This document shows, one piece after another, positions 1 through 49,939 of a DNA stretch of 64,000 nt. The DNA is taken from NCBI GenBank assembly GCA_002269645.1, contig NIVC01001162.1, positions 1-64,000 on the forward strand. The letters run 5' to 3'. The DNA comes from Macrostomum lignano. Taxonomy: Eukaryota. Numbering within the stretch: position 1 is the first letter of the stretch; the number at the start of each line of letters is the position of its first letter. A program made the position numbers and the translations under genes. A model generated the notes under the pieces. That model was given only the letters and a program-made list of their open reading frames with translations. It had not been told where the DNA came from and made no database searches.

Positions 1-1349
1 CATTCCCCAGGACACCAATCCACTGTCAGGATGAGAGCCAGAGACACTTAGGCAGGGAGACAACCAGAGGAGCCAGCAGATGGACCAAGGACAGAGCAGG
101 ATGGACCGGGCAGGGAGGGCAGAGCTCATAACTCCGAAGAATTGGAGGCAACTATGGCCAGATAAAAACAGGGTATAAAAGCGCGCTGGGATGCCAGCCC
201 AGAAAAAAAGACTCATCCCGTGGATGGAAGAGAAGGGGGTCCTGGCAGCAACCAGTGTGCATACCGCGCCTATCACGGGGCCCCGGACAATGTTTTCCGA
301 CTAGTTCAAGATGTCAAAGAAGAGAGACACAGAAACTATAAACACTTGGGTCTATTCCTAGATGTTGAGGCAGCCTTCGACTCAGTCAGGCATGACATGC
401 TCAGACACAGGACCACAGAAATACAAATGCACGTACCCTAGTCAGAATTACATCCAGCTACATGCATGACAGAAGGATCATAGTAAAGGTGGGCGAGAGC
501 CTGGGTGAGGTCTTCGTCCCCAGGCAGGGGTCCCCCAGGGCGGGGTCCTCAACCCACTCCTCTTTAACCTCTATGTTAGCACGATGCCCAAACCTCGGGT
601 CCCTGCGTCCAGACTAGTCAATATGCGGATGATATGGCCATTTGGGCCAGGTCTATTAGCCCCAAGTATGCCGCAGGGCATCTCCAAAAATACATAGAAA
701 ACCTTCAACCCTGGCTGGGGAAGTACGGCATCAAAGTTAATGCCAAAAAGAGTCAGGCAGTCAAATTCTACGACAATCGGTGCAAATCCGGACCTCGACA
801 CGACCCCCAGCCCTTAAACTCGATGGGGAAGAGATTCCCTACACAGACTCCGTTACATTCCAGCTTGGGGTCACCTTGGACAGAAACCTCAGCCTTAACC
901 AACACGTCAAAAGATACACAATAAATGCGAGGTCAGAACCTTCCAGATCAGGAGGATTGCCCGACTAACCAAGGTCCCAGCAGAACCTTCAGACTCCTGC
1001 ACAGAGCTTACATTGAGAGTGCATGACCTACGCCCCCCAAGTTCTCCTGTCCATGGGAAGCACCAACTTTACCAAACTCCAGCATATCCAAAACACCAAC
1101 CTCAGACTCTGCTACAATGCCCCCAAATTCACCAGAATCAACTATCTGCACAAAATAGCTAACATACCCATGGTTAAGCCCAGGGTAGAAAAGGTAGCCA
1201 CCAAATGGTACCAAAAAGTTATAGCTAACGCCATCCACGGATTCGAAATCCCCCCTCCAAAGCAAGCCTGGAGAAACCATAAGCTCCCAGATCCCCCATT
1301 AGACACATTAGTCAAACTCACCGAGCTGATGGAGAAGGCTGCAGGATAG
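1..1349 (+). mobile_element. Non-LTR retrotransposon (Jockey/I-like) reverse transcriptase remnant, frameshifted, 5' end outside the window
   Basis: RT motifs split across frames: LFLDVEAAFDS (220-441), GVPQGGVLNPLLF (about 525-565), QYADDMAIW (about 617-643), LGVTLDRNL (780-968) and a C-terminal ORF at 1023-1349. No restriction-like endonuclease motif is visible at the C-terminus. Confidence 0.85.
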
Positions 1350-2125
1350 TAGATCTCGCCGCCAAAACCATGTAAATCTAGTCCATGCAGCTCTCTATTA
1401 TCTAGTCCTTGCTGCTTTTTATTTTTACTCATCTAGTCGATGCTGCTTTTACAGTGCCTTTCTATTGCCAACTGGCTAACGCTCTTCTAACTGCGACAAT
1501 TTACACCCTATTATTCTATAAATGCGCGTCCTCTTGTGTAAGGGAGGAAGGCTCATAATTCCGCCTGGGCACTGCTGGGACTAGGGTCCGGGCTGGCCAA
1601 TTATGGCCACAGGATTGTCTACTCCCCAGTCTAATTAGATCCGCAACCTGAGCGAATCACCCCACCCTGCAGATGCCCTATTTTTTTACTTTGTGATGCC
1701 TTCTTTGTGAGCCTTCCTCCCATACGGTATTTCTGCACATCTTTTTTAGTTTTAGCTTCATGCACCAGTTTTACTCATCTTTTATATATTTGTTTTACTT
1801 TATTAACTTATACTTTCATTGCATCTACTCAATTTAATTTACTTTTTCAATTAATGTAATCTCTATTGACTTATGCTCTCCATTTTAAATGCTCTACATT
1901 TATTGCACCTTAATTTTACTACTGTATTCTTGCACCTGTTTTACTACCCTGCAGTACCAATGCAGTCTAAGTCTAACCTCAGTCTTTTACACCGCCAAAT
2001 TACTATTTTAAATAAACAGGCGCAAGAGCCAATTTTAAAACGGCTGACGCGTGGCCCGGAAGCTGTCTGCTTGACACTCCCGTGGCAAACTTATTAACGA
2101 ATTCCACTCTATTATTAACGAATTT

Positions 2126-2238
2126 GCCGTTTTGACGGTCTCTTACTGCGAAGACTCAATATTTTGCATGGTAAGACACCGCGTGGATCCAATTGAGCGA
2201 TCTACTCAATTTTTGACAAGCCGCGCTTCCGCGGCTGC
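2126..2238 (+). ncRNA. Spliced-leader (SL) RNA gene, copy 1; 45-nt exon 2126-2170 ending in ATG
   Basis: Sequence GCCGTTTTGACGGTCTCTTACTGCGAAGACTCAATATTTTGCATG|GTAAG has a 5' stem-loop (GCCGT/ACGGT), the flatworm-type terminal ATG followed by a GT donor, an Sm site AATTTTTGA (2208-2216) and a 3' hairpin AGCCGCG-CTTC-CGCGGCT. Confidence 0.9.
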
Positions 2239-2640
2239 CTAACAAAGCCTAAATTAATTGATTATTAATAATTATCCGTGTGTACAATAAATACGAGTAA
2301 TGATTATTCATTCGCCCTCGAGTCGCACCAGCAGCATCAAGAGACACATAATACAGCGAGCGCATCGCGGTGTGCAGTACACAGTGCAGGCTCGATCTCT
2401 TGGATCGATTTGCCATAATGAAATGTATTTTTTAGATCAATTGCTCTTCTATGACTATATACGAGTACATGTACAATTGTACAACTTTTTTATGGGATGG
2501 CGCTAATTAAAATTAAAAAGTCGAACTGCACTGCACTTGCGTTGAGCTAGCTATTGGTTGATAATGTCAATCACCACCAACTGTTGCTCGTATATATGAG
2601 ACGAGACGCCCCGTAATTAAGCGTACTACCTATTAGGTAT

Positions 2641-2889
2641 CAGTGGTGGCGCGGGGGGGCAGAGGGTGCTGCTGCCCCCGGGCGACCTCCTACCTACCCT
2701 CCTGGGGGTTGGTGACTTACATGTACCTCCCATCCCTCCGTGGTCTGACCCACAATAATTTCTTTAGTACGAGCTCGTTATATGCGTTTTTGTGAGATTT
2801 TATGCGATGCTCTAAAAATTCGCCGGCGAAGGGGGGTGACCACCCAACAACCACCCCCTCTAATCGGAGTTGGTGCTGCGCCGCCACTA
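2641..2889. mobile_element. Possible hAT-like MITE in the SL-5S spacer
   Basis: Ends CAGTGGTGGCGC and GCGCCGCCACTA form imperfect inverted repeats. No TSD was found. Confidence 0.35.
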
Positions 2890-2949
2890 ATGTTATTATG
2901 TATAGCTGCAGGTTCAGGTTAATTATGAGCTAAGCTCCTATTAGCCAGT

Positions 2950-3068
2950 GGCAACGGCCATACCACGTTGAAAACACCGGTTCTCGTCTGATCACCGAAG
3001 TTAAGCAACGTTGGGTTTGGTTAGTACTTGGATGGGTGACCGCCTGGGAATACCAAATGCTGTTGTCT
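2950..3068 (+). rRNA. 5S rRNA gene
   Basis: 119 nt, GGCAACGGCCATACCACG...GATCACCGAAGTTAAGC...GTACTTGGATGGGTGACCGCCTGGGAATACC...GTTGTCT. Helix I pairs (GGCAAC/GTTGTC) and boxes A and C are present. Confidence 0.97.
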
Positions 3069-3073
3069 TTTTT
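3068..3073 (+). terminator. Pol III oligo-T terminator of the 5S gene
   Basis: T6 run at the 3' end of the 5S sequence. Confidence 0.75.
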
Positions 3074-3575
3074 GCCTCTTTAACTGCCGCGCGCTCATTA
3101 AAACACTAATTCCATGCAGCTGCTGCACGCATTAATACACTACTATATGCTCCCTTCGGCTTCGACTCGGTCTCGATCACGGAGAAATTCGCGATTCCCC
3201 GTGGTGCTTTATAATTTTCTATGCGCACTTTCCACGCGGTGACGCGATGCACTTCAGTAGTTTTTCGATCGTATCTCTCTAACACGGCAACTATAGTTTT
3301 ATTTAATTTATATTAATATATTAATCAATTAGTTAGGCGGCGCATAATTTGTACACACTGTCTAAACATGTCGTCGGCTAAAAGAAACGAAAGGCAGAGC
3401 TGCACATGCACTTTCTGGCGCGTCTTTTCAAGCTGCAGTGCACAAGAATGCTGCACTATAGTCGGCATAACTTACTTGGAGTAGATGAAATTCAACATAA
3501 TCATTTGCCCTAGGGCTCGCGGCTCAAGCGCAGAGCTGTGCACTGTTGGAGAGCGTTTTCCATTCCACTCTCTTT

Positions 3576-3688
3576 GCCGTTTTGACGGTCTCTTACTGCG
3601 AAGACTCAATATTTTGCATGGTAAGACACCGCGTGGATCCAATTGAGCGATCTACTCAATTTTTGACAAGCCGCACTTTCGCGGCTGC
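3576..3688 (+). ncRNA. SL RNA gene, copy 2; exon 3576-3620; native upstream flank retained
   Basis: Exon, GT donor and Sm site are identical to copy 1. The 3' hairpin is AGCCGC-ACTTTC-GCGGCT. Confidence 0.9.
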
Positions 3689-4199
3689 CTAACAAAGCCT
3701 AAATTAATTGATTATTAATAATTATCCGTGTGTACAATAAATAATGATTATTCATTCGCCCTCGAGTCGCACCAGCAGCATCAAGAGACACATAATACAG
3801 CGAGCGCATCGCGGTGTGCAGTACACAGTGCAGGCTCGATCTCTTGGATCGATTTGCCATAATGAAATGTATTTTTTAGATCATTGCTCTTCTATGACTA
3901 TATACGAGTACATGTACAATTGTACAACTTTTTTATGGGATGGCGCTAGTTAAAATTAAAAAGTCGAACTGCACTGCACTTGCGTTGAGCTAGCTATTGG
4001 TTGATAATGTCAATCACCACCAATGGTAGCTGTCAATGGTAGCTGATTTATAGCCGACCGCGTCGCTAATCTTATAATTACGAACAGAGCAGAGTTTCAA
4101 AGTGAGCAGCGTGACTAACAACCCTATGGACAATGCTTGGTGCTGAGGCATGAGAATCCGTTGATAAATGGGCCATAAAGAAGTTTCAGAGTCCCCAGT

Positions 4200-4420
4200 T
4201 TTCAGCAATTAGAGATCGTGAAGGCGGTCTGTATCTGAGGTTGTTTATGGGTGCACTAATCCTGGAGGGCTGTGGTGCGACCTGGGGCCGCCTGGCCGAC
4301 CATCTTGCATCGCTGCTTTGAGCTGCCATTGCGCTAGGCGAAGCTACATGCGAAAGGAGCTGGTAAATGGACCACCTGGTCAGCCCTTGTGCCCCAGAAG
4401 TACTGGTAGTTAGATCTCTG
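4200..4420 (+). mobile_element. Putative LINE (RTE-like) 5'-UTR remnant; related sequence at about 6425-6480
   Basis: GGAGCTGGTAAATGGACCACCTGGTC...GCCCCAGAAG recurs as GGAGCTGGTAAAGGGACCACCTGGTC...GCCCCAGAAG near 6430. The family assignment is an inference. Confidence 0.35.
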
Positions 4421-4714
4421 AGGAGATCGGAGCAGGTGCACTAAGCGGCTTGGTGATGCCAGGCCTTTGGCAAATAATAAAGAGCTTCGCAGTGAGGACC
4501 CCAAACCTCTCGCCTTTGAAGACCCACCCCTATTCTCGTTGGTAGGGCCCTTGACTAGGCTGATCCGCGCCTTACGGCACCCCGTTTAACAACAATTAGA
4601 AACCCCTACCGATAAGTGCACCAAAGCCAGTGGGCATGCAAACTGACAACGAAACAATAACGCAGAAACATTGACTACTAGCAAGCTATGAATAATAACG
4701 AATTGCCGCCAGTG

Positions 4715-5116
4715 TCAGTACACATGCACCATTCCGTATAGGAAAGTCCAGAACGTGATGTAGGTGATGAGCTCGCCCATAACGCCGGAGGAGGCCAGAG
4801 CCCAGGCCGAGGGAAAATACCGCCACCTGGCCCGGCCCGCCTTGGCGAGCAGCAGGCAGGACAGGTAGCCGCTCGCCAGCATGTAGAATGCGAAGCCCAG
4901 CAGACCGGTCAGGCCCAGAATGCCGGCCGTGCAGCCCGACACTGCGGCCAGGGCTGTGCGGCAGTACGTTAGCAGGAAGGCGTTGTGCTGCAGGGCTGCG
5001 CCATTCAGAGCGGAACCGGGACTGCCCTGGTGCGGCCCGGCTGGGGTGCCACCCTGATGACCTGCACGCTTCGCTGCCTCCGCGCTCGGGGGCGAGTACG
5101 TGCCAGATGGGTCCAT
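4715..5116 (-). CDS. EMC6: ER membrane protein complex subunit 6, single coding exon, 133 aa
   Basis: [38 protein letters not shown]...[20 protein letters not shown] is the characteristic EMC6/TMEM93 sequence, including its C-terminus. Confidence 0.95.
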
Positions 5117-5149
5117 TGCTGCGGGTCAGTGAGGGCTTGCGTGACCCTG

Positions 5150-5665
5150 CAATCACCTCAACCTGCTCCTAACTCACCCACCTCAACCTGCTCCAAACTC
5201 ACCCCTGCACCACCTCACCCTGCACCCACCTCACCTGCTCCCACCTCACCCCTGCATCCACCTCACCCCTGCCTGCACCCACCTCACCCTGCTCTAAACT
5301 CACCTCACCCCTGCACCCACCTCATCCCTGCATCCACCTCACCCTGCTCCTAACTCACCCCTGCTCTCATTTCACCAATAAACCCACCTCACCCCTGCTC
5401 CCATTTCCCTAATGAACCCATCTCACCCTGCTCCTAACTCACCCCTGCACCCACCTCATCCCTGCATCCACCTCACCCTGCTCCTAACTCACCCCTGCTC
5501 TCACTTCACCAATAAACCCACCTCACCCCTGCTCCCATTTCCCTAATGAACCCATCTCACCCTGCTCCTAACTCACCCCTGCACCCACCTCAACCTGCTC
5601 CAAACTCACCCCTGCTCCCAACTCACCCTGCTCCTAACTCACCCCTGCACCCACCTCACCCTTAG
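5150..5665. repeat. C-rich degenerate minisatellite (CTCACCC units) with a higher-order repeat of about 120 bp
   Basis: Visible tandem CTCACCC(C)TG(C/T) units. Confidence 0.9.
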
Positions 5666-6051
5666 AGCAACCTGCACACAGCTAAAACAGCATATTTATT
5701 AACGTGAAATCGAAGGGAAGAAAGAAATATAAATGAAAGACAAGTTCAGCGTAGCAGTTGAAATAGAAAACTAGTTATTATTGTCTCAGCAAATCTGTAT
5801 AAGTTTCATACAGAGAAATGATCACAGTTTAACCATGTGACAAGATATAATCCAACAATATTCCAATTCTAATCGCTGATAAAAGCATGCTAATATTATA
5901 TGCGAATAAACGCAAGTAATGCAATCAGCACTAAAAGCGTGTGTGCTAGTAAATAATCTAGTAATGTATGTAGAGATATCCGGAATAGAAACATAAACTC
6001 TGGAATCTCGAGTAAGTACTTCATCGCAGCACAATATGGAATGCTGATAAT

Positions 6052-9000
6052 TCAATACTGTCCGTCCTCCTGCCGCTCAGCTCGAGACAGCCGGCTGTGC
6101 AGATCCAGCGGGATCACAAAGCAGGAAATGTCGTCAACTGACGCCTGCTCGCCGTCTGGGAGTCGCCAGCTGCCGCCGCCCCCGCCACCGGGTCGCTCCG
6201 GCTTCTGCCAGGCGCCTCGTGCAGCTCCGACCAGCTCTTGGGCGACAATGGTCAGGCTGGAATAGATGCGCTCTGGCTGTAAACAATTGTAAACAGAAAA
6301 CCTCAACTGGCTACTCGAAGAATGGGGCTAGTAGTAAGAATAGAATAAATAGAATAAGTCGCTTGCACACCCAAACACAATTATTAAGTCTGTGTGAGCG
6401 TGTGCCTGCTCACCTACCCGTGCAGGGAGCTGGTAAAGGGACCACCTGGTCTGGCTTCGCGCCCCAGAAGCTGGTACCCTGCAGTGTGACCCACTGGAAA
6501 CAAACGGGATTCCCTGTGCCGGAGCGGATCGGCTGAAGAGAGAGGGGCCGTCTAGGAGATTATACTCACAACTTACTCTTGGCATCCAATGAGTTATTAC
6601 TCTAGGGGAGTAGCGAACAATTAATTGGTCTAATTCTAGGCTTTTGGTGACAGCCTATCAACCAGAGCTCTTGTAGTGACTGGCTGCTAACTGGCTTTTC
6701 AGCAGCATTCACTAGCTTTCCTTAAGAGCTCTGTGTTCCGCTGCACAGCAGCTCAGTCCACCTGACCTAGAGAGAGAGTTACCCTGTGCTGGGCCTGAGT
6801 GTTTACTTCCCGATGACTCATCGCCCGAGCAGGCGTGGGCAGCCACACACAATGTCTTCCCACCCGCGCTGAGGAGGCATAGCAGGATGACTTATCACCT
6901 GCCCTGAGTGTAATGGCTGTCTAGAGGGAGTAAACAGGATGACTCATCCGCCCAAATCTATTTTTAGCACAGAAAAGCACGTGACTGCACGCTAGTTGTG
7001 CGTGGCAGCTGACCTTGAGTCACGCCACGGCGGCGTGACAGGGTTACCTTATTTGGAAGTTGGCCTTGAGTCACGCATCTCTTGCATGACTCGAGGCTCA
7101 AATAAGGAAGTTTCACGCGCTCAACCCCTTGAGACTCACGACTTTTGGGGGTCCGATCGGCTATAAATACAGAGCATCTGGGAGCCGTTTTTCCCCAGAC
7201 CTTGCATCCTTGCCGCCGCGCTTGGGCCTCGTCCGGAGCTGCTTCTCTGCCTCCGAGCACTCATCTCTCATTTCAGGATTTCAGGTTTTTCAGGTTCTAG
7301 CAGCTATTTTAGAAACGATCAAACTGTCGAGACATTTTCAGATTTGCCTTGCTCCAAGCGACTTCGTTATTTTATTTCAGGTTACGGACGCGTCGAGTCC
7401 GCAAACCAAGGTGGCAGCAACCCTACCAAGTCTAAGGCTAACGTTTTAGGTTTTCACAGGCAAATCGATAGGTAGTACAACGGTACTATCTAGCTACTTC
7501 CGGAGCATCGAGTTCAAATTTAGGTACATCATCAAGAACTCGGGAAGCAGCGCAACACTCTGAACATATCTCATAAGCCTAGGATCCTCGAATTCCAGGT
7601 GGGTCTTACTGGCAGGATACCAGCTTCTGAGGCATGATGCCTTCCAGGTGGTCCCGATTAACACCAGCTTATGAGGCATGATGCCTTCCAGGTGGTCTAT
7701 TTATTGGCTCCCTTCGCTGGTAGCCTCACCTAGCGCAGAGGCAGCTCAAGTATCACCTTTACGATGTCACCTGCTGGACTGCAAGGACACGCATACACCC
7801 CCAAGACGGTCAGTGCAGCAACGATCTCAAATCCCAGGAAATTCGTTTGACACTATGTTGCTTCCACAAAAAATGTTATTTTAAACCTTATTTTAAAAGA
7901 CTGACCAGGGCCCCAGACCGCACAGCGGCCGCCTCACCTATTAGCCGCAGTTGCGGCTTCTCGGGCTTGATTCAGGCAGCTCTGCACCGTCTTGGCGACC
8001 GCCTCGCAACTGATCACGTCCCATAGACCATCTGTTGCCATGACAAGCACATCTTCGCAGCCGTCTTGCTCAGCAGTCTGTACAACTGTCACCTGAGGCA
8101 CGCAGCTCAGAAAAGGTTTCAACTGAATTGGCGAGTCGAACACGCGCAGGTCGTGATCGCCGAAGCCGCGGGCGACGCCTATTGTGGCCAGCAGGCGGGA
8201 CTGCAGCGTGGTGGCGGGTGGCAACTGTTAGAGCCAGGCTTTTGCGCTTGCAGATTAGTTGGGGCGATTGTAGGATTTCCGAATTCGGGTGCTCGCACAG
8301 AGGCAAGTTAATAGGGCAGTTATTACGCGTTTTGCGCGAGACAACTCAATGGCGAAAATTTCATTATTTAAAGCGATATTCAAACAATCTTTTTGAAGCG
8401 AGCACAATCAATCATTCTTCAACTTTCTATTTACTCGCCTTTTTCTCGTCCCCAACAATGAGCGGAAACAGCAGATCCTCTTCAGTCACAGTTTTGTAAT
8501 GCCTGCCAATGATGATTATGTTCGAGCAGTTTGTGAATGGCGATTCTCAAGGGTGAATAACGATTCTTGAGGGTGAATGGCGATTCTTGAGGGTGAATGG
8601 CGGTTCTTGAGGGTGAATGGCGATTCTCGAGGGTGCATAGCGATTTTTGAGGGTGAATGGCGATTTTCGAGGGTGAATGGCGGTTCTTGAGGGTGAATGC
8701 CGATTCTCGAGGGTGCATGGCGATTCTCGAGGGTGCATGGCGATTCTCGAGGGTGCATGGCGGTTCTTGAGGGTGAATGGCGATTCTCGAGGGTGCATAG
8801 CGATTTTCGAGGGTGAATGGCGGTTCTTGAGGGTGAATGCCGATTCTCGAGGGTGCATGGCGATTCTCGAGGGTGAATGGCGGTTCTTGAGGGTGAATGG
8901 CGATTCTCGAGGGTGCATAGCGATTTTCGAGGGTGAATGGCGGTTCTTGAGGGTGAATGCCGATTCTCGAGGGTGCATGGCGATTCTCGAGGGTGAATGG

Positions 9001-9431
9001 CGGTTCTTGAGGGTGAATGGCGATTCTCGAGGGTGCATAGCGATTTTTGAGGGTGAATGGCGATTTTCGAGGGTGAATGGCGGTTCTTGAGGGTGAATGG
9101 CGATTCTCGAGGGTGCATGGCGATTCTTGAGGGTGAATGGAGATTCTCGGGTGTGAAGGCCGATTTATGAGGGTAAGCAGAGAAAACAAGTGTCTGACAC
9201 GACCCAAGCGCTGCTCCAGCTCACCATCCCTGCATGCAACCGTGTCTGCACAGAACCCGTTCACCCAAGTCCCGCCTGCCCAGTCGGCGAGCGAACTGCA
9301 GAGCGCAGAACTCCTTGTGCAACAGCTCCGGGTGGTGGCTGGCGATCAGCTGCAGCCGTTCCCGGTCGTTGTAGGGCGTCAGGTCCACCGACAGCGGCTG
9401 CGCCGACCCGGTGCGCTGGCACAGGACCGCT
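6052..9431 (-). CDS. PPM1H: PPM1H/PPM1J-like PP2C phosphatase, 3' half only; exons 9431-9225, 8502-8439, 8200-7938 and about 6276-6052
   Basis: RAVLC...DLTPYNDRERLQ...EFCALQFARR...GW|HYKTVTEEDLLFPLIVGDEKK|SRLLATIGVARGFGDHDL...VLVMATDGLWDV...DDISCFVIPL. The first three exons join in phase. The last junction does not reconcile (phase 2 donor, phase 0 acceptor), so a microexon or an indel is possible. Confidence 0.88.
6814..7169 (+). promoter_or_regulatory. AP-1 motif cluster plus TATA box (LTR-like promoter) inside the PPM1H intron
   Basis: Exact TGA(C/G)TCA at 6814, 6940, 7016 and 7067; TATAAATA at 7162. Confidence 0.4.
8520..9140. repeat. 20-bp minisatellite (GAGGGTGAATGGCGATTCTC), about 31 copies, intronic
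   Basis: Period of 20 read directly from the sequence. Confidence 0.97.
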
Positions 9432-10760: not shown

Positions 10761-12549
10761 TTAAACTTTATTTCTCTGGAATCCATAGAAACGCACTGGA
10801 AGCCGCACTCAGTTACGCGCTCAATTTCTTATCTCAAGTATGCAGTATATTAAACTGTCTCCATGGACAGTAGAGTACCATTTGCAAATGGTAGAGTATA
10901 TTATTTTATATGTTTATTTATACGAGTTACATTACGATACAATTGGCAACCGCTAACGTGGCACATAAGTGCTAATCATGAGAGTTGAATCATGTCTCTG
11001 GTCTTAGTATCTAATCTTATCGCTAGTCTATACTCCTTGATCTCACCTTGCCATTCTGAATTCATTGGTCCTATATATCCAATTTTATATTTTGTCTCTA
11101 ATCTGTAGTCTAAATGTATGTAATCCTTTAATCTAATATAATCTAATAGCTGCCAGGCAGCTCAGGCTTGAGTACGATTTTTCTAGCACCTGATTTCTAC
11201 GAAAGCACCCCATCGACATGGACTTTTTGTTGCAATCTTTTTTCAGTTTTAACATTTTTAGCCAACTGCTATGGTTGGTAACCATGATAAAAATTTGGCT
11301 CGTAAATAAATAACTCAATATAGTGAATTTGCATGCAGCACTTAGCATGAAGCCTCAGATTTATTTATGTAAATATCATTTGTACTACTCTTTATGCACT
11401 GCGGCAAATTTGCACAGATATGAGATGCATGTATTTTTCAGCAAGTACTGATACGCAAGGCTTCAATCAAAGTCTGACAATTCTGAAATCTTGTCAAATT
11501 AAGCCGAACCTCTAAATACATGTACAGATACAAGTCTGATACAAACAGAAGAGAGAAGAGATCAGATAGGAGAGATGAAAGAGGAGAAAGGAGAGATGAG
11601 AAAGCAGAGACGAGAAATGAGACAGTAGAGCTAGAACAGAGGAGAGAAGAGAGGGAAGAGATTATAGAGACGAGTGGAGAGAGAAGAGAAATATGTGAGA
11701 GCAGACATGAGAGACAATGGGATAAAAATGGAGTGAAGGAGAAAGGAGAATAAAGGGGGAGAATCCAGAGGACAGGAAGAGAGGGGAAGGGAGAGAAGAG
11801 AGATGAGAGGAAAAAGAAGAATGGAGAAGGGAAAGAGTAGAAAGGAGAAGAGAGATGGGAGAGCAGGAGAGATGAGAGGGAGGAGAGAGTAGAGAGGGGA
11901 GGTGAAAGAGTAAAGGGGAGAAAGTTGAGAGAAGAGTTGGGAGAGTTGGGAAAAAAGAAGAGAGATGTTAAAGGAGAGTACAGATGAGAGATGAGAGAGA
12001 GGAGATAAGACAAGAAATAAATAATAGGAGAGAGGGTCGAGATAATAGAGGAGAGAGAATTGAGAATTTCGCACTGACCTACAAGGTGCGAACAAACACG
12101 AGAAATCAAACTGAAATGTGCTAATTTTAACAGTCCTAGACTTCCATTGTTCCTACAAAATTTTAAACAGCGAGGCAGGACCTACTGCGGGGCAGACCCA
12201 TAGAATTTTTTCCGGTTTCCAAGATAATATTGACTTATAGGGAATAAACACATACCGTACGAGCTCAAATTTGAGCTCAAAGTTCGAGCTCAAATCCTAA
12301 ATATTTAAACATCGCCACATGAGCACAGAGTCACAACATAGTTTGAATATGATGGAAAGCGCACGTAAATAAGCGAAAAGCGGTATCCAACGGGGCAACA
12401 CAAGCAATCTTTCAATACGCTAATTGGGAAGGGATTAAGCAATCACGGGCTAACTTCCATTCTGCCACTCAGCGGGGGTCGAATGGGAGACTAACTCCTA
12501 ATAAATAAATTTTCTCAGTCCTATAATCTTTAATGGCATGACACGGCCT

Positions 12550-19300: not shown

Positions 19301-21654
19301 GCCGGCTACGGTTGGCAGCAGCCGCCTCTGCCGCCGCAGCAGCAGCAGCAACAGCAGCCGCAGTCAACTGGAACAAGGCAGGATTATCAGGAGGAAGCCA
19401 TGAGGATGTCCGTGCTAACGGCTGCCGAGGATAAGGTGGATATTTGAATCATTTTGAGACTGTTCTCCCAGATCCCCATATGCAATTAGCAAGATGTTAT
19501 CCCAGTATTCCCCCAGATCCCCATATGCCATCGGCAAGATTTTATCCCAGTATCCCCCCAGATCCCCATATGCAATGGGCGAGATTTATCCCAGTATTCC
19601 CCCAGATCCCCATATGCAATGGGCGAGATTTATCCCAGTATTCCCCCAGATCCCCATATGCAATGGGCGAGATTTATCCCAGTATTCCCCCAGATCCGCA
19701 TATGCAATGGGCGAGATTTATCCCAGTATTCCCCCAGATCCGCATATGCAATGGGCGAGATTTATCCCAGTATTCCCCCAGATCCCTATATGCAATGGGC
19801 GAGATTTATCCCAGTATTCCCCCAGATCCGCATATGCAATGGGCGAGATTTATCCCAGTATTCCCCCAGATCCGCATATGCAATGGGCGAGATTTATCCC
19901 AGTATTCCCGCAGATCCCTATATGCAATGAGCAAGATTAGATCCCCTTAGATTAGATCCCCTTTAGATTCCCTATAATAAATTTCCATAGATCCCCATAT
20001 GCAATCAACAAAGCACTAGCGGTACAGTGAACAGCTGTCTTCAGGTGTCAATTCGCACATCTCGAATCGCCGATTCCAATCGTAGGTTCGCCGTCGCTAC
20101 AGCGAGAAACGAGCCCAGCTAGAAGCCGAGCTCGACGTTGTTCGTCGCACCGGGCAGGATCTGCGAGAAGGTCGGGAGAAGCTGGAAAAGCTGTTGAGGG
20201 GCCTGGAGACGGAGCTGCAATCGGTGGGAGACTACACCACCCGCCTGCGCCAGGCCAACAGCCAGGCCGAGGAGATGCTCACCCAGATGGCCGCTCAGGA
20301 GTCCGTCGGAGTTGACGAAGCGATCGACGCCACGGCGCCGCTCTACAGGCAGATTGTTCGCTGCTACGCCGAGGAGCAGGCGCTGGAGGACACGATCTTC
20401 GCACTGGGCGACGCGCTGCGCAAAGGCTGCGTTGATATCGACTCGTACTTAAAGGCAAGCCGCCGCCGTTCCTGTCCCGCCCTTCCAATGAGGGTTGGAA
20501 GTTGGAAGCAAGATCACTGAAGGGTCTGAGGGTTTCACCAGCGGGCCCTGATAGATTAGATGGAAGGGGTAGAAGCGGGCTCTACAAGATCATAGGGTCC
20601 CTGAAAGATAGGAGGGTTGGGATTGAAGCTGGTGCCTGGGGGATAGGAGGGTTGGGATTGAAGCTGGTGCCTGAAGGATAAGGAGGGTTGGGATTGAAGT
20701 CGGTGCCTGGGGGATAGGAGGGTTGGGATTTTTAAGCCGGTGCCTGGGGGATAGGAGGGTTGGGATTGAAGCTGGTGCCTGAAGGATAAGGAGGGTTGGG
20801 ATTGAAGTCGGTGCCTGGGGGATAGGAGGGTTGGGATTGAAGCCGGTGCCTGGGGGATAGGAGGGTTGGGATTGAAGCTGGTGCCTGAAGGATAAGGAGG
20901 GTTGGGATTGAAGTCGGTGCCTGGGGGATAGGAGGGTTGGGATTTTTAAGCCGGTGCCTGGGGGATAGGAGGGTTGGGATTGAAGCTGGTGCCTGAAGGA
21001 TAAGGAGGGTTGGGATTGAAGTCGGTGCCTGGGGGATAGGAGGGTTGGGATTGAAGCCGGTGCCTGGGGGATAGGAGGGTTGGGATTGAAGCTGGTGCCT
21101 GAGGGATAGGAGGGTTGGGATTGAAGCCGGTGCCTGGGGGATAGGAGGGTTGGGATTGAAGCTGGTGCCTGAGGGATAGGAGGGTTGGGATTGAAGCTGG
21201 TGCCTGAGGGATAGGAGGGTTGGGATTGAAGCTGGTGCCTGAGGGATAGGAGGGTTGGGATTGAAGCTGGTGCCTGAGGGATAAGGAGGGTTGGGATTGA
21301 AGCTGGTGCCTGAGGGATAGGAGGGTTGGGATTGAAGCTGGTGCCTGAGGGATAGGAGGGTTGGGATTGAAGCTGGTGCCTGAAGGATAAGGAGGGTTGG
21401 GATTGAAGCCGGTGCCTGGGGGATAGGAGGGTTGGGATTGAAAGATAGGAGGGCGGGCTTGAAGGATAGGAGGGCGGTGGCCAGTCGTTTCTGAACGGGC
21501 AGCAATAGCAATTCAGTAGCAACCAGCAGCTGCTAATTACCCTGATGTCGCCAACCCGACATTGCAGACGATTCGCGAGTTGAGCAGGCGCCAATTTCTT
21601 CTGCGAGCAACTGTACAGATGGGCCGGCAGAAGGCCGGCTTGCCAGATATGTGA
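16386..21654 (+). CDS. TSG101: TSG101/Vps23 (ESCRT-I); exons 16386-16427, 18818-19435, 20086-20454 and 21568-21654
   Basis: MANFDGFLRTQLSS|NYKHPE...GTIPVVHKGSTYNIPVC (UEV domain), Pro/Gln-rich linker, coiled coil, and Steadiness box PLYRQIVRCYAEEQALEDTIFAL...DSYLK|TIRELSRRQFLLRA. All junctions are phase 0. Confidence 0.95.
17862..18157. mobile_element. MITE with 14-bp TIR CATACATGCGCAAC and 8-bp TSD ATATAAGT
   Basis: Perfect TIRs and an exact 8-bp duplication. It is the same family as 28035-28312. Confidence 0.9.
19468..19928. repeat. 44-bp minisatellite, about 10 copies, TSG101 intron 2
   Basis: GATCCCCATATGCAATGGGCGAGATTTATCCCAGTATTCCCCCA units. Confidence 0.97.
20605..21450. repeat. 35-36-bp G-rich minisatellite, about 23 copies, TSG101 intron 3
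   Basis: GATAGGAGGGTTGGGATTGAAGCTGGTGCCTGGGG units. Confidence 0.97.
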
Positions 21655-35580: not shown

Positions 35581-38500
35581 ATGTCCACTATAGCAAGTGG
35601 ACTCTCTAGTGCAGATAAGCCAAGGTGTTTGGTGCCTCGCTGTCACCAGGAATTATTGCCAGCTTTCTGGACTGATGCTGCTAAGCAGTTCAGCTTAGTG
35701 TACTATGATGACTTTGTCAAGCAGCCTAGCCACTATGGGCCTGGGGTCCAAGCCGCTTTTGTCACCATTGACAGTGGAATTCTTGATGATGGAGGCTTGG
35801 CTAACCTGCCTGATTTGAAGGTAAGTGCAATTTGACCTAATCTGCTAAAATTCATGCCTACTATATTGGCTGGGCCAGCTGGCAGTTGCACATATATGAT
35901 CTTGCATCGGTATCTCACCTTCTCCCCCCTGCTTTCTGTATCTCACCTCCCTCTCCCCTCTGGTTTCTGCATCTCACCCCCTCTCCCTCATGGTTTTTTA
36001 CATCTCACCTCCCTCTCCCCTGGTTTCTGCATCTCACCCTCCCTCTCCCCCATGGTTTCTGCATCTCACCCTCCCTCTCCCCCTGGTTTCTGCATCTCAC
36101 CCTCCCTCTCCCCCTGGTTTCTGCATCTCACCCTCCCTCTCCCCCTGGTTTCTGCATCTCACCCTCCCTCTCCCCCATGGTTTCTGCATCTCACCCTCCC
36201 TCTCCCCCATGGTTTTCGCATCTCACCCTCCCTCTCCCCCATGGTTTTCGCATCTCACCCTCCCTCTCCCCCATGGTTTTCGCATCTCACCCTCCCTCTC
36301 CCCCATGGTTTTCGCATCTCACCCTCCCTCTCCCCTGGTTTTTGCTCATTTACTTAGGCAGTGCCCTCTCCCTCCTCACCCAGGCAGTGGCCAGCTACGG
36401 TGTCGGATTTGATCATTTGAACTTGCGCGCACTCGCGGATCGCTCGGTCACCGTCACCAACACACCTGGCGTCATTGCCGATGCCACGGCTGAGACTGCC
36501 GTCTACCTCATGCTATCCGTTGCTAGGCGAGCCTCGGCCATGGCGGCCGCTCTGGCTGCCGGACACTCGACTGGCTGGCCGGGCATCGAACCCGGACAGG
36601 TAGAGAAGGATAGGGATGACTATTAATCTGATGATAATTTATCCAAATGCGTATCAGGAATATTAAACAGAATCGCTGTAGTGGCCCTATCGGCCCTTCA
36701 AATCAAAGCCTTTACAATCATTCTTTACAATCTACCCTAATCAGTCGCAAGAATCGGCCCTAATCAGTCGCAAGAATCGGCCCTAATCAGTCCCAAGAAT
36801 CGGCCCTAATCAGTCCCAAGAATCGGCACTAATCAGTCCCAAGAATCGGCCCTAATCAGTCCCAAGAATCGGCACTAATCGGTCCCAATAATTGGCACTA
36901 ATCAGTCCCAAGAATCGGCCCTAATCAGTCCCAAGAATCGGCACTAATCAGTCCCAAGAATCGGCCCTAATCAGTCCCAAGAATCGGCCCTAATCAGTCC
37001 CAAGAATCGGCCCTAATCAGTCCCAAGAATCGGCCCTAATCAGTCCCAAGAATCGGCACTAATCAGTCCCAAGAATCGGCCCTAATCAGTCCCAAGAATC
37101 GGCACTAATCGGTCCCAATAATTGGCACTAATCAGTCCCAAGAATCGGCCCTAATCAGTCCCAAGAATCGGCACTAATCAGTCCCAAGAATCGGCCCTAA
37201 TCAGTCCCAAGAATCGGCCCTAATCAGTCCCAAGAATCGGCCCTAATCAGTCCCAAGAATCGGCACTAATCATTCCCAAGAATCAGCACTAATCAGTCCC
37301 AAGAATCAGCACTAATCAGTCCCAAGAATCGGCCCTAATCAGTCCCAAGAATCGGCCCTAATCAGTCCCAAGAATCGGCCCTAATCAGTCCCAAGAATCG
37401 GCACTAATCAGTCCCAAGAATCGGCACTAATCAGTCCCAAGAATCGGCACTAATCAGTCCCAAGAATCGGCACTAATCAGTCCCAAGAATCGGCACTAAT
37501 CAGTCCCAAGAATCGGCACTAATCAGTCCCAAGAATCGGCACTAATCAGTCCCAAGAATCGGCACTAATCAGTCCCAAGAATCGGCACTAATCAGTCCCA
37601 AGAATCGGCCCTAATCAGTCCCAAGAATCGGCCCTAATCAGTCCCAAGAATCGGCACTAATCAGTCCCAAGAATCGGCACTAATCAGTCCCAAGAATCGG
37701 TACTAATCAGTCCCAAGAATCGGCCCTAATCAGTCCCAAGAATCGGCCCTAATCAGTCCCAAGAATCGGCACTAAACCGTGCGCATCGGTGCTCGGCACC
37801 CCCAGGATCTCCTGGGCCGTCGCCTTGGCATCGTCGGCCTCGGCAGCGTCGGCCGCGCCGTGGCCAAACGCTGCAGCCCCGGCGGCCTCGGCATGCACAT
37901 CGCCTATCACCAGCGCCGGCGCGCCCCGTCAGACGTTGAAGCCTCGCTTGGCGGCGCTGAGTTCGTCGCCAGCCTGGACGATCTGGCAGCCGGCTCTGAC
38001 GTCCTCCTGCTGGCCTGTCCCCTGACTGAACAGACTCGGCACCTAGTCGACGCCCGACGACTGACGCTGATGTCGCCAACCGCATTCTTGATCAACGTTG
38101 GCCGCGGCGGCCTGGTGGACACCGACGCTCTGCTGACGGCTCTGCGCCTTGGCAAAATCTACGGCGCCGGGCTGGACGTCACGGATCCGGAGCCTCTGCC
38201 TAGCGGCCATCCGCTGCTGACAGAGGCTGTCCGGCTCAATGTCACAGTCAGCCCCCATGTGGGCACCCACACTGTGGATACCATGGCCAGGTGCGTGACC
38301 TGTGTGGCTGTGCTGTGTGATCCTGAGCGTGACTGTGCTGTGTGATCCTGAGTGTGGCTGTGCTGTGTGATCCTGATTGTGACTGTGCTGTGTGATCCTG
38401 AGTGTGACTGTGCTGTGTGATCCTGAGTGTGACTGTGCTGTGTGATCCTGAGTGTGACTGTGCTGTGTGATCCTGAGTGTGACTGTGCTGTGTAATCCCG

Positions 38501-39484: not shown

Positions 39485-41097
39485 ATGCCCAGGCGAAAGT
39501 TCACCAAGCCGAGGCAATTAAAAAGGCCCAAACCTGACCAGCAGCCGGAGAATGAAGATGAGGAACAGAAATATTCTACTAAAAGCCGGCAAAGAACCAA
39601 AGCCGCTAAGAAGTCGGCATCGATAGTGTGCCGGCACTGCAACAAGGCCTTTAAAACTCGCCGCTATGCCGTGCTGCACGAGGCCTCTTGCCAGATGGCC
39701 AACTCTAGCGGCGCCGCCAGCTTCCAAGCCGTCCAGTGCGACGAGTGCGGCGGCAGCTACGCCAACCATATCAGCTACAACTCGCACCTGTCCTATTGCA
39801 AAGGTGTCCGCAATAATCCCCAGCACCCTTGCCAGCTGTGCAGCCAAGCGTTTGCCAGGTTGCACGATTTGAAGCGTCACATGGAACTGACGCACAATGG
39901 GATTAAACGGTTTGTCTGTGACCTGTGCTACAGACCGTTCGGCCGCGCCAACCACTTGCGGCGGCATGTGGAGACTCTGCATCGGGACGGGAAGCTGCAC
40001 CTGAGCAAGAAAAAATCCGGACAGAAAGAACGTGGTGAGTATGCAACTTTTGAGCTCAACTATATGTGGAAGGGTTGCGGTGCTGACAGGTGGGACTCTG
40101 TGAGGGATGCGGTGCTGACAGGTGGGACTCTGGGAGGGTTGCGGTGCTGACAGGTGGGACTCTGGGAGGGATGCGGTGCTGACAGGTGGGACTCTGGGAG
40201 GGATGCGGTGCTGACAGGTGGGACTCTGGGAGGGTTGCGGTGCTGACAGGTGGGACTCTGGGAGGGATGCGGTGCTGACAGGTGGGACTCTGGGAGTGAT
40301 GCGGTGCTGACAGGTGGGACTCTGGGAGGGATGCGGTGCTGACAGGTGGGACTCTGGGAGTGATGCGGTGCTGACAGGTGGGACTCTGGGAGGGATGCGG
40401 TGCTGACAGATGGGACTCTGGGAGTGATGCGGTGCTGACAGGTGGGACTCTGGGAGGGATGCGGTGCTGACAGGTGGGACTATGGGAGGGATGCGGTGCT
40501 GACAGGTGGAACTCTGGGAGGGATGCGGTGCTGACAGGTATGACTGGGATTTATTTAGCACCTAACCTGACTACTCAAACAGAACAGATGTCCTTAATGC
40601 GACTTTCAGAATTGGATAACCCGCCAGCTGAGCAGGCGGCCTTGCTGGACGATTTGAAATTGGCCTGTCCGTTCAGCGACTGCGGCGACATCATGGAAGA
40701 CGCAGAGCAGCTGCGAGTTCACCTGGCCAGTCATTGCGGCTCCAGCGACGAGGTGTTGGACCTCGGCAGTGCGGAGCAGGCGGAGCTCCGCATCGTTGAA
40801 TTGGACTCGAAACCGGCTCTGCAACAGAAGCAGAAGAAGCAGAAAAAGCCAAGTAAGAGGCGTCTCGACGATCCGTTTATGTGCCCGTTGAATCGCATCT
40901 GCTGCCAGAGTTTCAACCGGTTCAGCCATCTGATGCGCCATCTCAGCAGCACCCACAAGCACGTGTTTTTGGGCGGCCGGAACCTGCTGCAGCGATGCAC
41001 CACTCTGCGCATTAATAGCAATGGCGAAGGCGAAGGAACCGGCCTGCTGCCCGACAGGTGCGCCCAGCTGCGCAGGTCCGCTATGCCGACTGACTGA
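39485..41097 (+). CDS. C2H2/C2HC zinc-finger protein with six fingers; exons 39485-40034 and 40610-41097 (3' end uncertain)
   Basis: CRHC..H..C, CDEC..H..C, CQLC..H..H, CDLC..H..H, CPFSDC..H..H and CPLNRICC..H..H. The G|GTGAGT donor and TTTCAG|AA acceptor are in phase. A possible further donor AG|GTGCGC lies near 41057. Confidence 0.85.
40070..40545. repeat. 32-bp minisatellite, about 15 copies, zinc-finger gene intron
   Basis: GATGCGGTGCTGACAGGTGGGACTCTGGGAGG units. Confidence 0.97.
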
Positions 41098-49019: not shown

Positions 49020-49935
49020 GTTCCTCGATGGCTCTTTGCTGAGTCATCGAGGAAGCGCGGACCCGCCAGTCGAGCCTGATTGCTCTCTTTATTGACTCCA
49101 GGAAGGCTTTCGACTCGGTCGTGAGGGCCGTGCTCCCAATGGTGCTTCGTGCGTACAACGTGCCAGAGCAGCTGATTTTCGCTGTCATGGCGCTGTAATG
49201 GCACGAGCGCTGCTGTGCTAACACCGGACGGCCTGTCGGATCTCTTTGAGACATCCTCTCATGGGGTGCTTCTGGGAGATACGCTTGCGCCGTTCCTGTT
49301 TGTTCTGGTGCTTGACTGGGTGCTGCGGACTGCTCTCCCTTCTAACGACGACGGCTTCCTGTTGAAGCGACGCATGGGTCGACGCCAACCGGAGAGGCGG
49401 CTCAGCGTGCTTGGCTACGACGACGATCTCGCCCTGTTGTCCTCGACCGTCGAGGGCGCCCAACGCCAGCTGGACTCGCTGGTAAGTGTTGCGACGAGCG
49501 TCGGCCTGGTGGTCAATGCAACGCGCAGAAGACCGTCGTGCTCTGCGTGCCGGACGACATCGATGCTGCAATTTTCTGCCGAGGCGCTGAAGGGCAGGTG
49601 ACGAAGCTTCCGTGCTGTCAGCAGTTCGTCTACCTCGACAGTCTGTGGTGCCTAACGTTCGCGAGGACCTGTGACGTCGCCCTGGACTTGCCCGGGCTTG
49701 CCTGGGCGTTCCGTGAGGGCTGTCAGCTGTAGTCCGAGGCCATGCCCGACCGCCAGAGGACCTGTTCCAGGCGGTGATCGACCGTCCTGGTGTACAACCG
49801 AAACCTGGACGCTGAAGGATTCACTCGAACAGCTGGTCGATGCAGCGCACGCTGGCCTGCTGCGCGCCGCCTTCAAGATCGGCTACGAGCACGTCTACAA
49901 TGCGGCACTCTATCGCCGCGCCGGCCTGTCCCGTC
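49020..49935 (+). mobile_element. RTE-clade-like reverse transcriptase remnant with stops and frameshifts
   Basis: LFIDSRKAFDSV; GVLLGDTLAPFLFVLVLDWVLR; LGYDDDLALL; GLVVN. Confidence 0.85.
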
Positions 49936-49939
49936 CCAG

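What the first reader, a model, noticed from the sequence alone, without database searches (positions are those of the whole stretch)
2041..2130. Foreign junction 25 nt upstream of SL copy 1: possible retrotransposon insertion into the SL promoter
Seen: homology with copy 2 stops at 2101. A 12-nt motif TTATTAACGAAT occurs twice (2091-2102 and 2112-2123), interleaved with the native ATTCCACTCT, and a + strand LINE ORF ends about 750 bp upstream. Known: SL-targeting retroelements (CRE/SLACS/CZAR, NeSL) are RLE-type, whereas this RT looks Jockey/I-like with no RLE motif. Inference: this may be a new SL-targeting lineage, and copy 1 has lost its upstream promoter. It is not proven that 1350-2100 is the element's 3' UTR.
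Basis: partly seen in the sequence, partly recalled or inferred. Interest (0 to 1): 0.7.

Follow-up and report, generated by a model that had tools for sequence, protein, structure and literature searches.

The report
LINE tail abutting a spliced-leader gene
In the flatworm Macrostomum lignano, the 3' tail of a broken LINE retrotransposon copy sits 25 bases upstream of a variant spliced-leader RNA gene and replaces its native upstream DNA, but this is one old event copied by genome duplication, with no sign that the element family targets such genes.

Summary
Homology between the two SL-5S repeat copies ends at 2101. TTATTAACGAAT occurs exactly twice, at 2091 and 2112, flanking native ATTCCACTCT. 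A LINE ORF stops at 1347-1349.

The window is Macrostomum lignano. Two paralogous contigs of assembly GCA_002269645.1 carry the identical junction, so it is real, but it is a single inherited event.

Of all 7-mers in 1350-2102, only TGGCAAA (2083) also occurs after the ORF in all three closest relatives, near their apparent 3' ends. The LINE therefore most likely ends at about 2100.

The copy is 5'-truncated inside the RT, at about window 206, and has no endonuclease domain. Its 5' flank has no SL-unit sequence and no target-site duplication. Relatives are APE-type with zinc-knuckle ORF1s, and none lies near an SL or 5S gene.

The SL genes here differ from the canonical M. lignano leader and sit in a 1.33-unit orphan fragment beside host genes.

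SL copy 1 has lost all native sequence upstream of -25. "A new SL-targeting lineage" has no support (about 4%). Other genomic copies could not be reached with these tools.

The parts
206..1349 (+). 5'-truncated LINE ORF2 remnant: RT domain to the natural C-terminus, stop TAG at 1347-1349. No APE, RNase H or RLE.
   Evidence: Pfam RVT_1, E=6.8e-25. tblastn hits cover 205-1298. Full-length relatives match only from ORF2 residue ~557 of 946. The C-terminus coincides with those of relatives. In paralog L008 the same ORF is open for 396 aa. Most frameshifts in the window are window-unique 1-nt deletions.
1350..2100 (+). Probable LINE 3' UTR, about 750 nt, T-rich with degenerate repeats, ending in the motif TGGCAAA (2083-2089) and a short A/T-rich tail CTTATTAACGA.
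   Evidence: TGGCAAA is the only one of 747 7-mers shared with the post-ORF regions of all three closest relatives (L003, L009, L010). In each it lies near the apparent 3' end and is followed by an A/T-rich tail. L011 has GGCAAACTAAATC. Tandem repeats lie at 1376-1423 and 1689-1716.
2091..2103 (+). First copy of the 13-nt repeat TTATTAACGAATT. It spans the LINE tail / SL-unit junction at 2100|2101.
   Evidence: Identical in L007 and L008.
2101..2110 (+). Native SL-proximal island ATTCCACTCT, equal to 3562-3571 in copy 2.
   Evidence: ACTC(TC)TTTGCCG is conserved in the Macrostomum SL locus L006.
2111..2122 (+). 12-nt insertion ATTATTAACGAA replacing a single C. It is a direct copy of the LINE tail and lies at -15 to -4 relative to the SL exon.
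   Evidence: Shared by all three paralogous loci.
2126..2238 (+). SL RNA gene copy 1, variant type. Exon 2126-2170 ends in ATG, the donor GTAAG is at 2171, the Sm site is AAUUUUUGA, and the RNA forms three hairpins.
   Evidence: Comparison with the M. cliftonense and M. hystrix SL and the canonical M. lignano SL. Fold z-score -3.2.
2950..3068 (+). 5S rRNA gene inside the 1450-bp SL-5S unit.
   Evidence: Rfam RF00001, 116.5 bits.
3562..4031 (+). Copy 2 of the unit start. It holds SL RNA gene copy 2 (exon 3576-3620) with native upstream DNA. Homology ends at 4031, next to the 3' region of the EMC6 gene.
   Evidence: The 13-nt tandem duplication CAATGGTAGCTGT at 4021-4045 is absent from paralog L008.

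Best explanation
The junction at 2100|2101 is the 3' end of a dead LINE copy lying against a small orphan SL-5S repeat fragment in Macrostomum lignano.

- The LINE copy is 5'-truncated, spans about 206-2100, and belongs to an APE-type lineage.
- The SL-5S fragment holds 1.33 units of a 1450-bp repeat with a variant SL.
- The LINE tail (TGGCAAA + CTTATTAACGA) was joined 14 nt upstream of the SL exon in native numbering, most likely by target-primed reverse transcription.
- A 12-nt templated copy of that tail was added 10 bp further downstream, either at the same time or soon after. The junction now lies at -25.
- SL copy 1 therefore keeps only 10 native bases upstream of -15 and has lost any upstream promoter element.
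- This was a single event that predates the duplication of this chromosome region, and it is ordinary, non-targeted insertion.
- Either the insertion came with loss of the upstream target DNA, or the LINE-plus-array block was later moved here as DNA.

Shown: the junction, the duplication, the truncation, the shared inheritance and the conserved 3' motif.
Inferred: TPRT as the joining mechanism, the origin of the 12-nt copy, and loss of promoter function.
For: - Junction and repeat confirmed.
- Copy 2 is ancestral, from cross-species conservation of CTCTTTGCCG.
- The window is M. lignano. The EMC6 ORF is found exactly in NIVC01001163.1 and NIVC01000629.1, which are 98-99% identical to the window. 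Both carry the identical junction with both 12-mers.
- LINE identity: RVT_1. The natural ORF2 C-terminus is shared with relatives. Relatives have Exo_endo_phos + RVT_1 and zf-CCHC ORF1s.
- 3' end: TGGCAAA at 2083 is the only 7-mer of the 750-nt stretch shared with the post-ORF regions of all three closest relatives. In each it is near the 3' end and followed by an A/T-rich tail. L010 shows that a 2-kb 3' UTR occurs in this lineage.
- 5' truncation: there is no match to ORF2 residues 1-556 of relatives that are 42-47% identical.
- The locus is genic (EMC6, PP2C, UEV, RRM, cofilin). It holds only 1.33 units with a variant SL, and copy 2 carries four extra exon substitutions in paralog L008.
Against: - No target-site duplication was found.
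- There is no SL-unit DNA in the 5.3-6.7 kb upstream of the LINE, so a simple clean TPRT insertion into an array is not what is seen.
- The tail is short and not poly(A).
- The 3'-end argument rests on a 7-nt motif in three or four relatives whose own 3' ends are inferred, not mapped.
- No second copy of the same family was available.
- The mechanism that made the second tail copy has no precedent that I know of.
Confidence: 0.68

Rival explanations
1. The LINE belongs to a new APE-type family that integrates position-specifically just upstream of SL RNA genes. The two tail copies 10 bp apart would then be two hits, or a re-initiated hit, at a preferred site.
For: - The LINE tail lies 14 (now 25) nt from the SL exon, in the same orientation.
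- A second 11-12-nt copy of the tail lies 10 bp downstream.
- The element's 3' end is supported at the junction.
- APE-type LINEs with target or position specificity are known: the R1 and Tx1 clades (PMC4640811), and Dictyostelium TRE5-A (my own knowledge).
Against: - Only one event exists. The window, L007 and L008 share the identical junction by descent.
- The 5' flank has no SL-unit sequence and no TSD.
- Relatives L001, L002 and L009-L012 have no SL-like or 5S gene nearby.
- The only other SL locus seen (L006, another Macrostomum species) has native DNA at that position.
- The ORF2 C-terminus lacks the Cys/His motif that I recall for R1 and Tx1 elements.
- No expressed or annotated protein of the family was found at more than 42% identity.
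Confidence: 0.04
2. The LINE ends somewhere before 2100. The junction is then just the edge of an SL-5S orphon joined to unrelated DNA by double-strand-break repair, with the 12-nt repeat as a templated (alt-EJ type) insertion. The LINE 750 bp away would be incidental.
For: - No poly(A), no TSD and no upstream target DNA.
- The junction carries a templated duplication, as error-prone end joining produces (my own knowledge).
- The other edge of the fragment, at 4031, is certainly not a LINE end. It abuts the 3' region of EMC6.
Against: - The lineage-specific motif TGGCAAA sits 11 nt before the junction, and it is the only 7-mer of the region shared with all three closest relatives.
- No alternative 3' end (A-rich tract or simple repeat) exists between 1350 and 2083.
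- The 13-nt duplication at the right edge is absent in L008, so it is a later slippage event, not a signature common to both edges.
Confidence: 0.17
3. 3' transduction. A LINE sitting upstream of an SL-5S array read through into the array, and the LINE plus 1.33 units was retrotransposed here as one RNA.
For: The LINE, both SL genes and the 5S gene are in one orientation. The array piece is short and ends abruptly at 4031.
Against: - No TSD was found between the DNA after 4031 and the DNA before the LINE 5' end.
- There is no A-rich tail at 4031.
- The conserved 3' motif suggests that the RT recognises its own 3' end.
- The 12-nt tail copy is not explained.
Confidence: 0.03
4. Assembly artefact: a chimeric join or a collapsed repeat created the junction.
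For: - The window carries nine unique 1-nt deletions relative to both paralogs, which hints at consensus errors.
- The true array may be longer than 1.33 units if it was collapsed.
Against: The identical junction and 12-nt repeat are present in two contigs of an independent assembly, GCA_002269645.1. One has 1.33 units and the other a single copy.
Confidence: 0.02

Closest known systems
SL-exon-specific non-LTR retrotransposons: NeSL-1 (nematodes) and CRE1/CRE2/SLACS/CZAR (trypanosomatids)
   Same: A non-LTR retroelement lies next to a spliced-leader RNA gene in a tandem SL(-5S) repeat.
   Different: - Those elements encode a restriction-like endonuclease C-terminal to the RT and insert at a fixed position inside the SL exon, with target sequence on both sides (PMC4640811).
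- Here ORF2 ends about 110 aa after the RT with no RLE.
- Relatives carry an N-terminal APE.
- The junction is 25 nt upstream of the exon.
- The 5' flank is not SL-unit DNA.
- Only one event is known.
APE-type target-specific LINEs: R1 clade (R1, TRAS, SART, R7) and Tx1 clade (Keno in U2 snRNA genes, Mutsu in 5S)
   Same: The endonuclease is APE-type in the lineage, and the element lies next to a multicopy small RNA gene.
   Different: - Those families are defined by many copies at one nucleotide position within the target.
- Clade membership of this RT was not tested.
- There is no C-terminal Cys/His motif.
- No second independent copy was available.
Position-specific LINEs upstream of small RNA genes (Dictyostelium TRE5-A, about 48 bp upstream of tRNA genes; my own knowledge)
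   Same: An APE-type LINE whose 3' end faces a small RNA gene at a short distance upstream of the transcription start.
   Different: TRE5-A shows this for hundreds of copies through contact with Pol III factors. Here there is one event, and the neighbour is an SL RNA gene, which in other organisms is transcribed by Pol II (my own knowledge).
Ordinary 5'-truncated Jockey/CR1-like LINE insertions, and orphons of tandem gene families
   Same: - The copy is 5'-truncated inside the RT.
- The ORF has decayed.
- The 3' UTR is long with a short A/T-rich tail.
- A short array fragment (1.33 units, variant gene copies) sits among host genes.
   Different: - No TSD is present.
- An extra templated copy of the tail lies 10 bp into the target.

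Membership tests
Non-LTR retrotransposon (LINE) | Reverse transcriptase domain with the LINE-type motifs (FLDVEAAFD, GVPQG, YADD) | tested here: met
   Pfam RVT_1, E=6.8e-25 for the stitched window ORF and 7.3e-25 for the open 396-aa ORF of paralog L008. Invariant motif columns appear in alignment A1.
Non-LTR retrotransposon (LINE) | Target-site duplication flanking the copy | tested here: not met
   There is no copy of ATTCCACTCT or its context within 5-7 kb upstream. Only chance-level 9-10-nt repeats were found.
APE-type LINE (Jockey/I/CR1-like groups) | N-terminal apurinic-like endonuclease in ORF2 | tested here: inconclusive
   Absent from this copy, which is 5'-truncated at about ORF2 residue 557. 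Present in the closest full-length relatives: P0113, P0115 and P0116 have Exo_endo_phos/Exo_endo_phos_2, and so does L001.
APE-type LINE (Jockey/I/CR1-like groups) | Placement in a named clade by RT phylogeny | not tested
   No reference RT set was available. Supporting hints only: the ORF1 of relatives has zf-CCHC, and there is no RNase H after the RT.
SL-targeting RLE elements (NeSL, CRE/SLACS/CZAR) | Restriction-like endonuclease and zinc finger C-terminal to the RT | tested here: not met
   ORF2 stops about 110 aa after the RT with one Cys and no PD-(D/E)xK-like motif. Relatives end at the same place.
SL-targeting RLE elements (NeSL, CRE/SLACS/CZAR) | Insertion at a fixed site inside the SL exon, with target on both sides | tested here: not met
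   The junction is 25 nt upstream of the exon. There is no SL-unit DNA 5' of the element.
Any target-specific retrotransposon family | Several independent copies at the same target position | not testable with these tools
   Only three paralogous loci with an identical junction were reachable. No annotated protein of the family exists in the collection, and there is no DNA search of the M. lignano genome.
Flatworm SL RNA gene | 5' leader ending in ATG, GTAAG donor, Sm site and three hairpins | tested here: met
   The exon is 2126-2170, with GTAAG at 2171 and the Sm site AAUUUUUGA. Fold z-scores are -3.2 and -3.3.
Flatworm SL RNA gene | Leader identical to the SL found on the species' mRNAs | tested here: not met
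   The window has ...CTCAATATTTTGCATG and the hairpin GCCGTTTTGACGG. The published M. lignano SL is ...CTCAATTTATTGCATG (PMC8629364), and Macrostomum SLs have GCCGTAAAGACGG.
5S rRNA gene | Match to the Rfam 5S model over its full length | tested here: met
   RF00001, 116.5 bits, model positions 1-120, at 2950-3068. The same gene is in L008.

The most novel reading that the evidence does not exclude
This LINE could represent an APE-type family with zinc-knuckle ORF1 that integrates position-specifically a few nucleotides upstream of SL RNA genes in Macrostomum. It would be the first SL-associated retrotransposon outside the RLE clades. The doubled tail 10 bp apart would be a footprint of repeated priming at a preferred site. 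The copy seen here would be a block carried out of a main SL-5S array where more such insertions sit.
Probability: 0.04. Interest if true: 0.7.

Novelty: new member of a known kind. Interest (0 to 1): 0.22.

Why it matters
As it stands, this is an ordinary dead LINE copy beside an orphan SL-5S fragment. It is useful mainly as annotation:

- The SL-like genes here are a variant type, linked to 5S, and probably not the working SL genes of M. lignano.
- One of the two copies has no native upstream DNA.
- The locus gives a dated marker, because the insertion predates the regional duplication in this hidden polyploid.
- A candidate conserved 3' motif (TGGCAAA) could help to delimit this LINE lineage.

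Only if other copies proved to sit at the same place beside SL genes would it matter for how retrotransposons acquire target specificity.

Tried and rejected
1. Weak homology continuing upstream of 2101: rejected. Scores are at shuffle level.
2. Both edges of the SL-5S fragment carrying junction-spanning duplications made by one repair process: attractive at first. It was dropped because the 13-nt duplication at 4021-4045 is missing in paralog L008, so it is later slippage.
3. The left flank end and the right flank start as a TSD or a once-contiguous site: similarity is not significant, 80/500 shuffles.
4. TSD searches for a simple insertion and for 3' transduction: nothing above chance. CCAATCCACTGTC at window 15-27 (11/13) is at chance level.
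5. LINE continuing 5' of window 200 (my reading of PGPDG-like frames): rejected. Relatives at 42-47% identity give no match upstream.
6. 'Old, heavily frameshifted LINE': revised. Nine of the frameshifting deletions are unique to the window, and the paralog ORF is open for 396 aa.
7. Reaching canonical M. lignano SL loci through the gene next to the SL on L006: failed, because L006 is from another species.
8. Finding other genomic copies through proteins: none. The exact ORF is not on record, the best relatives are 41-42% identical, and ten window ORFs are not in the collection.
9. A 3'-terminal hairpin: not supported, z-score -0.59.
10. PDB comparison: only distant L1, R2 and group II RTs, no help for the clade.

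Full report
**Observation.** The window starts inside a plus-strand LINE reading frame and then enters a 1450-bp repeat.
- Copy 1 (2123-2588) matches copy 2 (3573-4031) at 97.2%, and nothing else in the 64 kb matches 1-4100.
- The unit contains a 5S rRNA gene at 2950-3068 (Rfam, 116.5 bits).
- It also contains an SL RNA gene whose core occurs only at 2137 and 3587.
- A global alignment shows ATTCCACTCT at 2101-2110 = 3562-3571. Copy 1 then has ATTATTAACGAA (2111-2122) where copy 2 has a single C.
- TTATTAACGAAT is found exactly twice, at 2091 and 2112. The identity is 13 nt.
- Upstream of 2101 there is no residual homology to the unit; alignment scores equal shuffle scores.
- The ORF stops at 1347-1349.
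- The exon start at 2126 follows from the 45-nt M. cliftonense SL, GCCGTAAAGACGGTCTCTTACTGCGAAGACTCAATTTATTGCATG (PMC10468722 supplement).

**Which copy is ancestral.** A scan of metagenome contigs for the SL core found one genomic Macrostomum SL gene, L006. It reads ...CGCCGTAAACTCTTTGCCGTAAAGACGG. CTCTTTGCCG is therefore native. Copy 2 has the ancestral arrangement, and the 12 nt in copy 1 are an insertion that copies the sequence straddling the junction.

**Source organism and paralogs.**
- The single-exon EMC6 ORF at 4718-5116 (minus strand) is found exactly in two contigs of Macrostomum lignano assembly GCA_002269645.1: L007 = NIVC01001163.1 and L008 = NIVC01000629.1.
- L008 is colinear with window 1-9174 at 97.9%. 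L007 is 98.8-99.1% identical but has a single copy of the repeated segment and no 5S gene. That is as expected from recombination between the two copies.
- Both contigs carry the identical LINE-to-SL junction, with both 12-mers.
- The junction is therefore real, and it is one event inherited by at least three paralogous loci of this hidden polyploid.
- The 13-nt tandem duplication at the right edge (4021-4045) is absent in L008, so it arose later.

**The SL genes.**
- The leader differs from the published M. lignano SL (CGGTCTCTTACTGCGAAGACTCAATTTATTGCATG; PMC8629364) at two exon positions.
- It also differs in the first hairpin loop (GCCGTTTTGACGG against GCCGTAAAGACGG).
- The RNA still folds into three hairpins with an Sm site.
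- In L008, the copy 2 exon has four further substitutions.
- The fragment is only 1.33 units long. It lies among host genes: EMC6, PP2C, UEV, an RRM protein, a C2H2 protein and cofilin.
This is an orphan fragment of a variant SL-5S repeat, not the main SL locus.

**The LINE.**
- The stitched ORF matches Pfam RVT_1.
- Most frameshifts in the window are window-unique single-base deletions. In L008 the ORF is open for 396 aa up to the same stop.
- Relatives end ORF2 at the same position. There is no RNase H and no restriction-like endonuclease.
- A profile search found full-length relatives at 38-42% identity, with Exo_endo_phos + RVT_1. Their ORF1s carry a zinc knuckle. The lineage is APE-type.
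- These relatives match the M. lignano loci only from ORF2 residue ~557 of 946. The copy is therefore 5'-truncated inside the RT, at about window 206.

I asked which k-mers of 1350-2102 recur in the sequence after the ORF stop of the three closest relatives (L003, L009, L010).
- Of 747 7-mers, exactly one is in all three: TGGCAAA at 2083-2089.
- Of 748 6-mers, only TGGCAA and GGCAAA qualify, and both lie at the same site.
- In each relative the motif lies near the apparent 3' end and is followed by an A/T-rich tail.
- L011 has GGCAAACTAAATC.
- The motif occurs once in window 1-4000, against a background of 0.1-0.2 per kb.
- L010 shows that 2-kb 3' UTRs with internal repeats occur in this lineage.
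This supports a 3' end at about 2100, with the tail CTTATTAACGA(AT). The 3' ends of the relatives are themselves inferred, so I put this at about 0.8.

**What does not fit a clean insertion into an array.**
- The 5.3-6.7 kb upstream of the LINE in L008 and L007 contain no SL-unit sequence.
- They contain no displaced promoter-proximal sequence, even with 8 errors allowed in 31 nt.
- No TSD was found.
Either the integration deleted the upstream target, or a block made of part of a LINE plus 1.33 units was later copied here from elsewhere. A 3' transduction model also lacks a TSD.

The second tail copy lies 10 bp downstream of the junction. That distance would suit the second-strand nick of a staggered break. 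I regard it as a templated repair or template-switch by-product, but this is inference.

**Targeting.** No independent copy of the family could be reached.
- The family has no annotated or assembled protein above 42% identity.
- No DNA search of the M. lignano genome is on hand.
- Relatives L001, L002 and L009-L012 have no 5S or SL-like gene nearby.
- The only other SL locus seen, L006 from another Macrostomum species, is unoccupied.
- Known SL-specific elements are RLE-type and insert within the exon. APE-type specificity is known for the R1 and Tx1 clades (PMC4640811).
I estimate about 4% for a targeting lineage.

**Verdict.**
- The structural reading, a LINE 3' end 25 nt upstream of SL copy 1 with its native upstream DNA replaced, is supported.
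- Functional promoter loss is a reasonable inference, because only 10 native bases remain upstream of the inserted 12 nt.
- The claim of a new SL-targeting lineage is unsupported.
This is a new member of a known kind, of low interest.

Noticed in passing
window 2126-2238 and 3576-3688; L008 (NIVC01000629.1) and L007 (NIVC01001163.1): The SL RNA genes here are a variant. They have two exon differences and a different first-hairpin loop compared with the published single M. lignano SL, and they are linked to a 5S gene in a 1450-bp unit. The fold is intact. Copy 1 is identical in all three paralogous loci. Copy 2 has 2 substitutions in the window and 4 in L008, clustered, which may reflect gene conversion from other variants. 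Whether the variant leader is ever used is unknown.
   Followed up: partly
L007 (NIVC01001163.1), locus 11094-11577: One paralogous locus has lost a whole unit, including the 5S gene and SL copy 2. It keeps the left (LINE) and right (EMC6-side) junctions around a single SL copy, as expected from recombination between the two copies.
   Followed up: yes
window 4021-4045: The 13-nt tandem duplication CAATGGTAGCTGT spans the right edge of the SL-5S fragment. It is present in the window and L007 and absent in L008.
   Followed up: yes
window 243, 429, 517, 592, 803, 907, 975, 1021, 1580: These are single-base deletions, mostly of C. All but the one at 803, which L007 shares, are unique to the window relative to both NIVC01 paralogs. 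They create most of the apparent frameshifts in the LINE ORF. They are either consensus errors of the window's assembly or lineage-specific decay.
   Followed up: partly
window 2084-2089 and 2123-2128: GGCAAA in the LINE 3' motif and TTTGCC at the start of the SL gene region form a 6-bp inverted repeat that brackets the two tail copies. It may be chance.
   Followed up: no
window 4692-4708: TAATAACGAATTGCCG lies just after the EMC6 stop on the other strand. It matches the tail-copy/SL-start 17-mer TATTAACGAATTTGCCG with 2 edits. One of 30 whole-window shuffles gave such a match. It was chosen post hoc and is probably chance.
   Followed up: partly
window 49840-50766 (+): A second, unrelated LINE remnant: an ORF with the C-terminal part of RNase H and a zf-RVT motif. 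There is weak RT similarity at 50245-50760.
   Followed up: no
window 5175-5662, 8530-9170, 20600-21450, 36800-37700, 40076-40507, 58390-59230: Many minisatellite arrays (periods 17-40 nt) generate long spurious ORFs on both strands.
   Followed up: no
window 4318-4408, 6426-6476, 7688-7749 (-): A short dispersed repeat of about 60 nt, 82-85% identical, occurs three times around the EMC6 and PP2C genes.
   Followed up: no
L009 2-2056 (Logan SRR24204725): The ORF upstream of ORF2 in the closest full-length relative combines a 2OG-Fe(II) oxygenase (AlkB-like) domain (E=3.5e-20) with a weak zinc-knuckle match. This is either an unusual LINE ORF1 or a chimeric contig.
   Followed up: no
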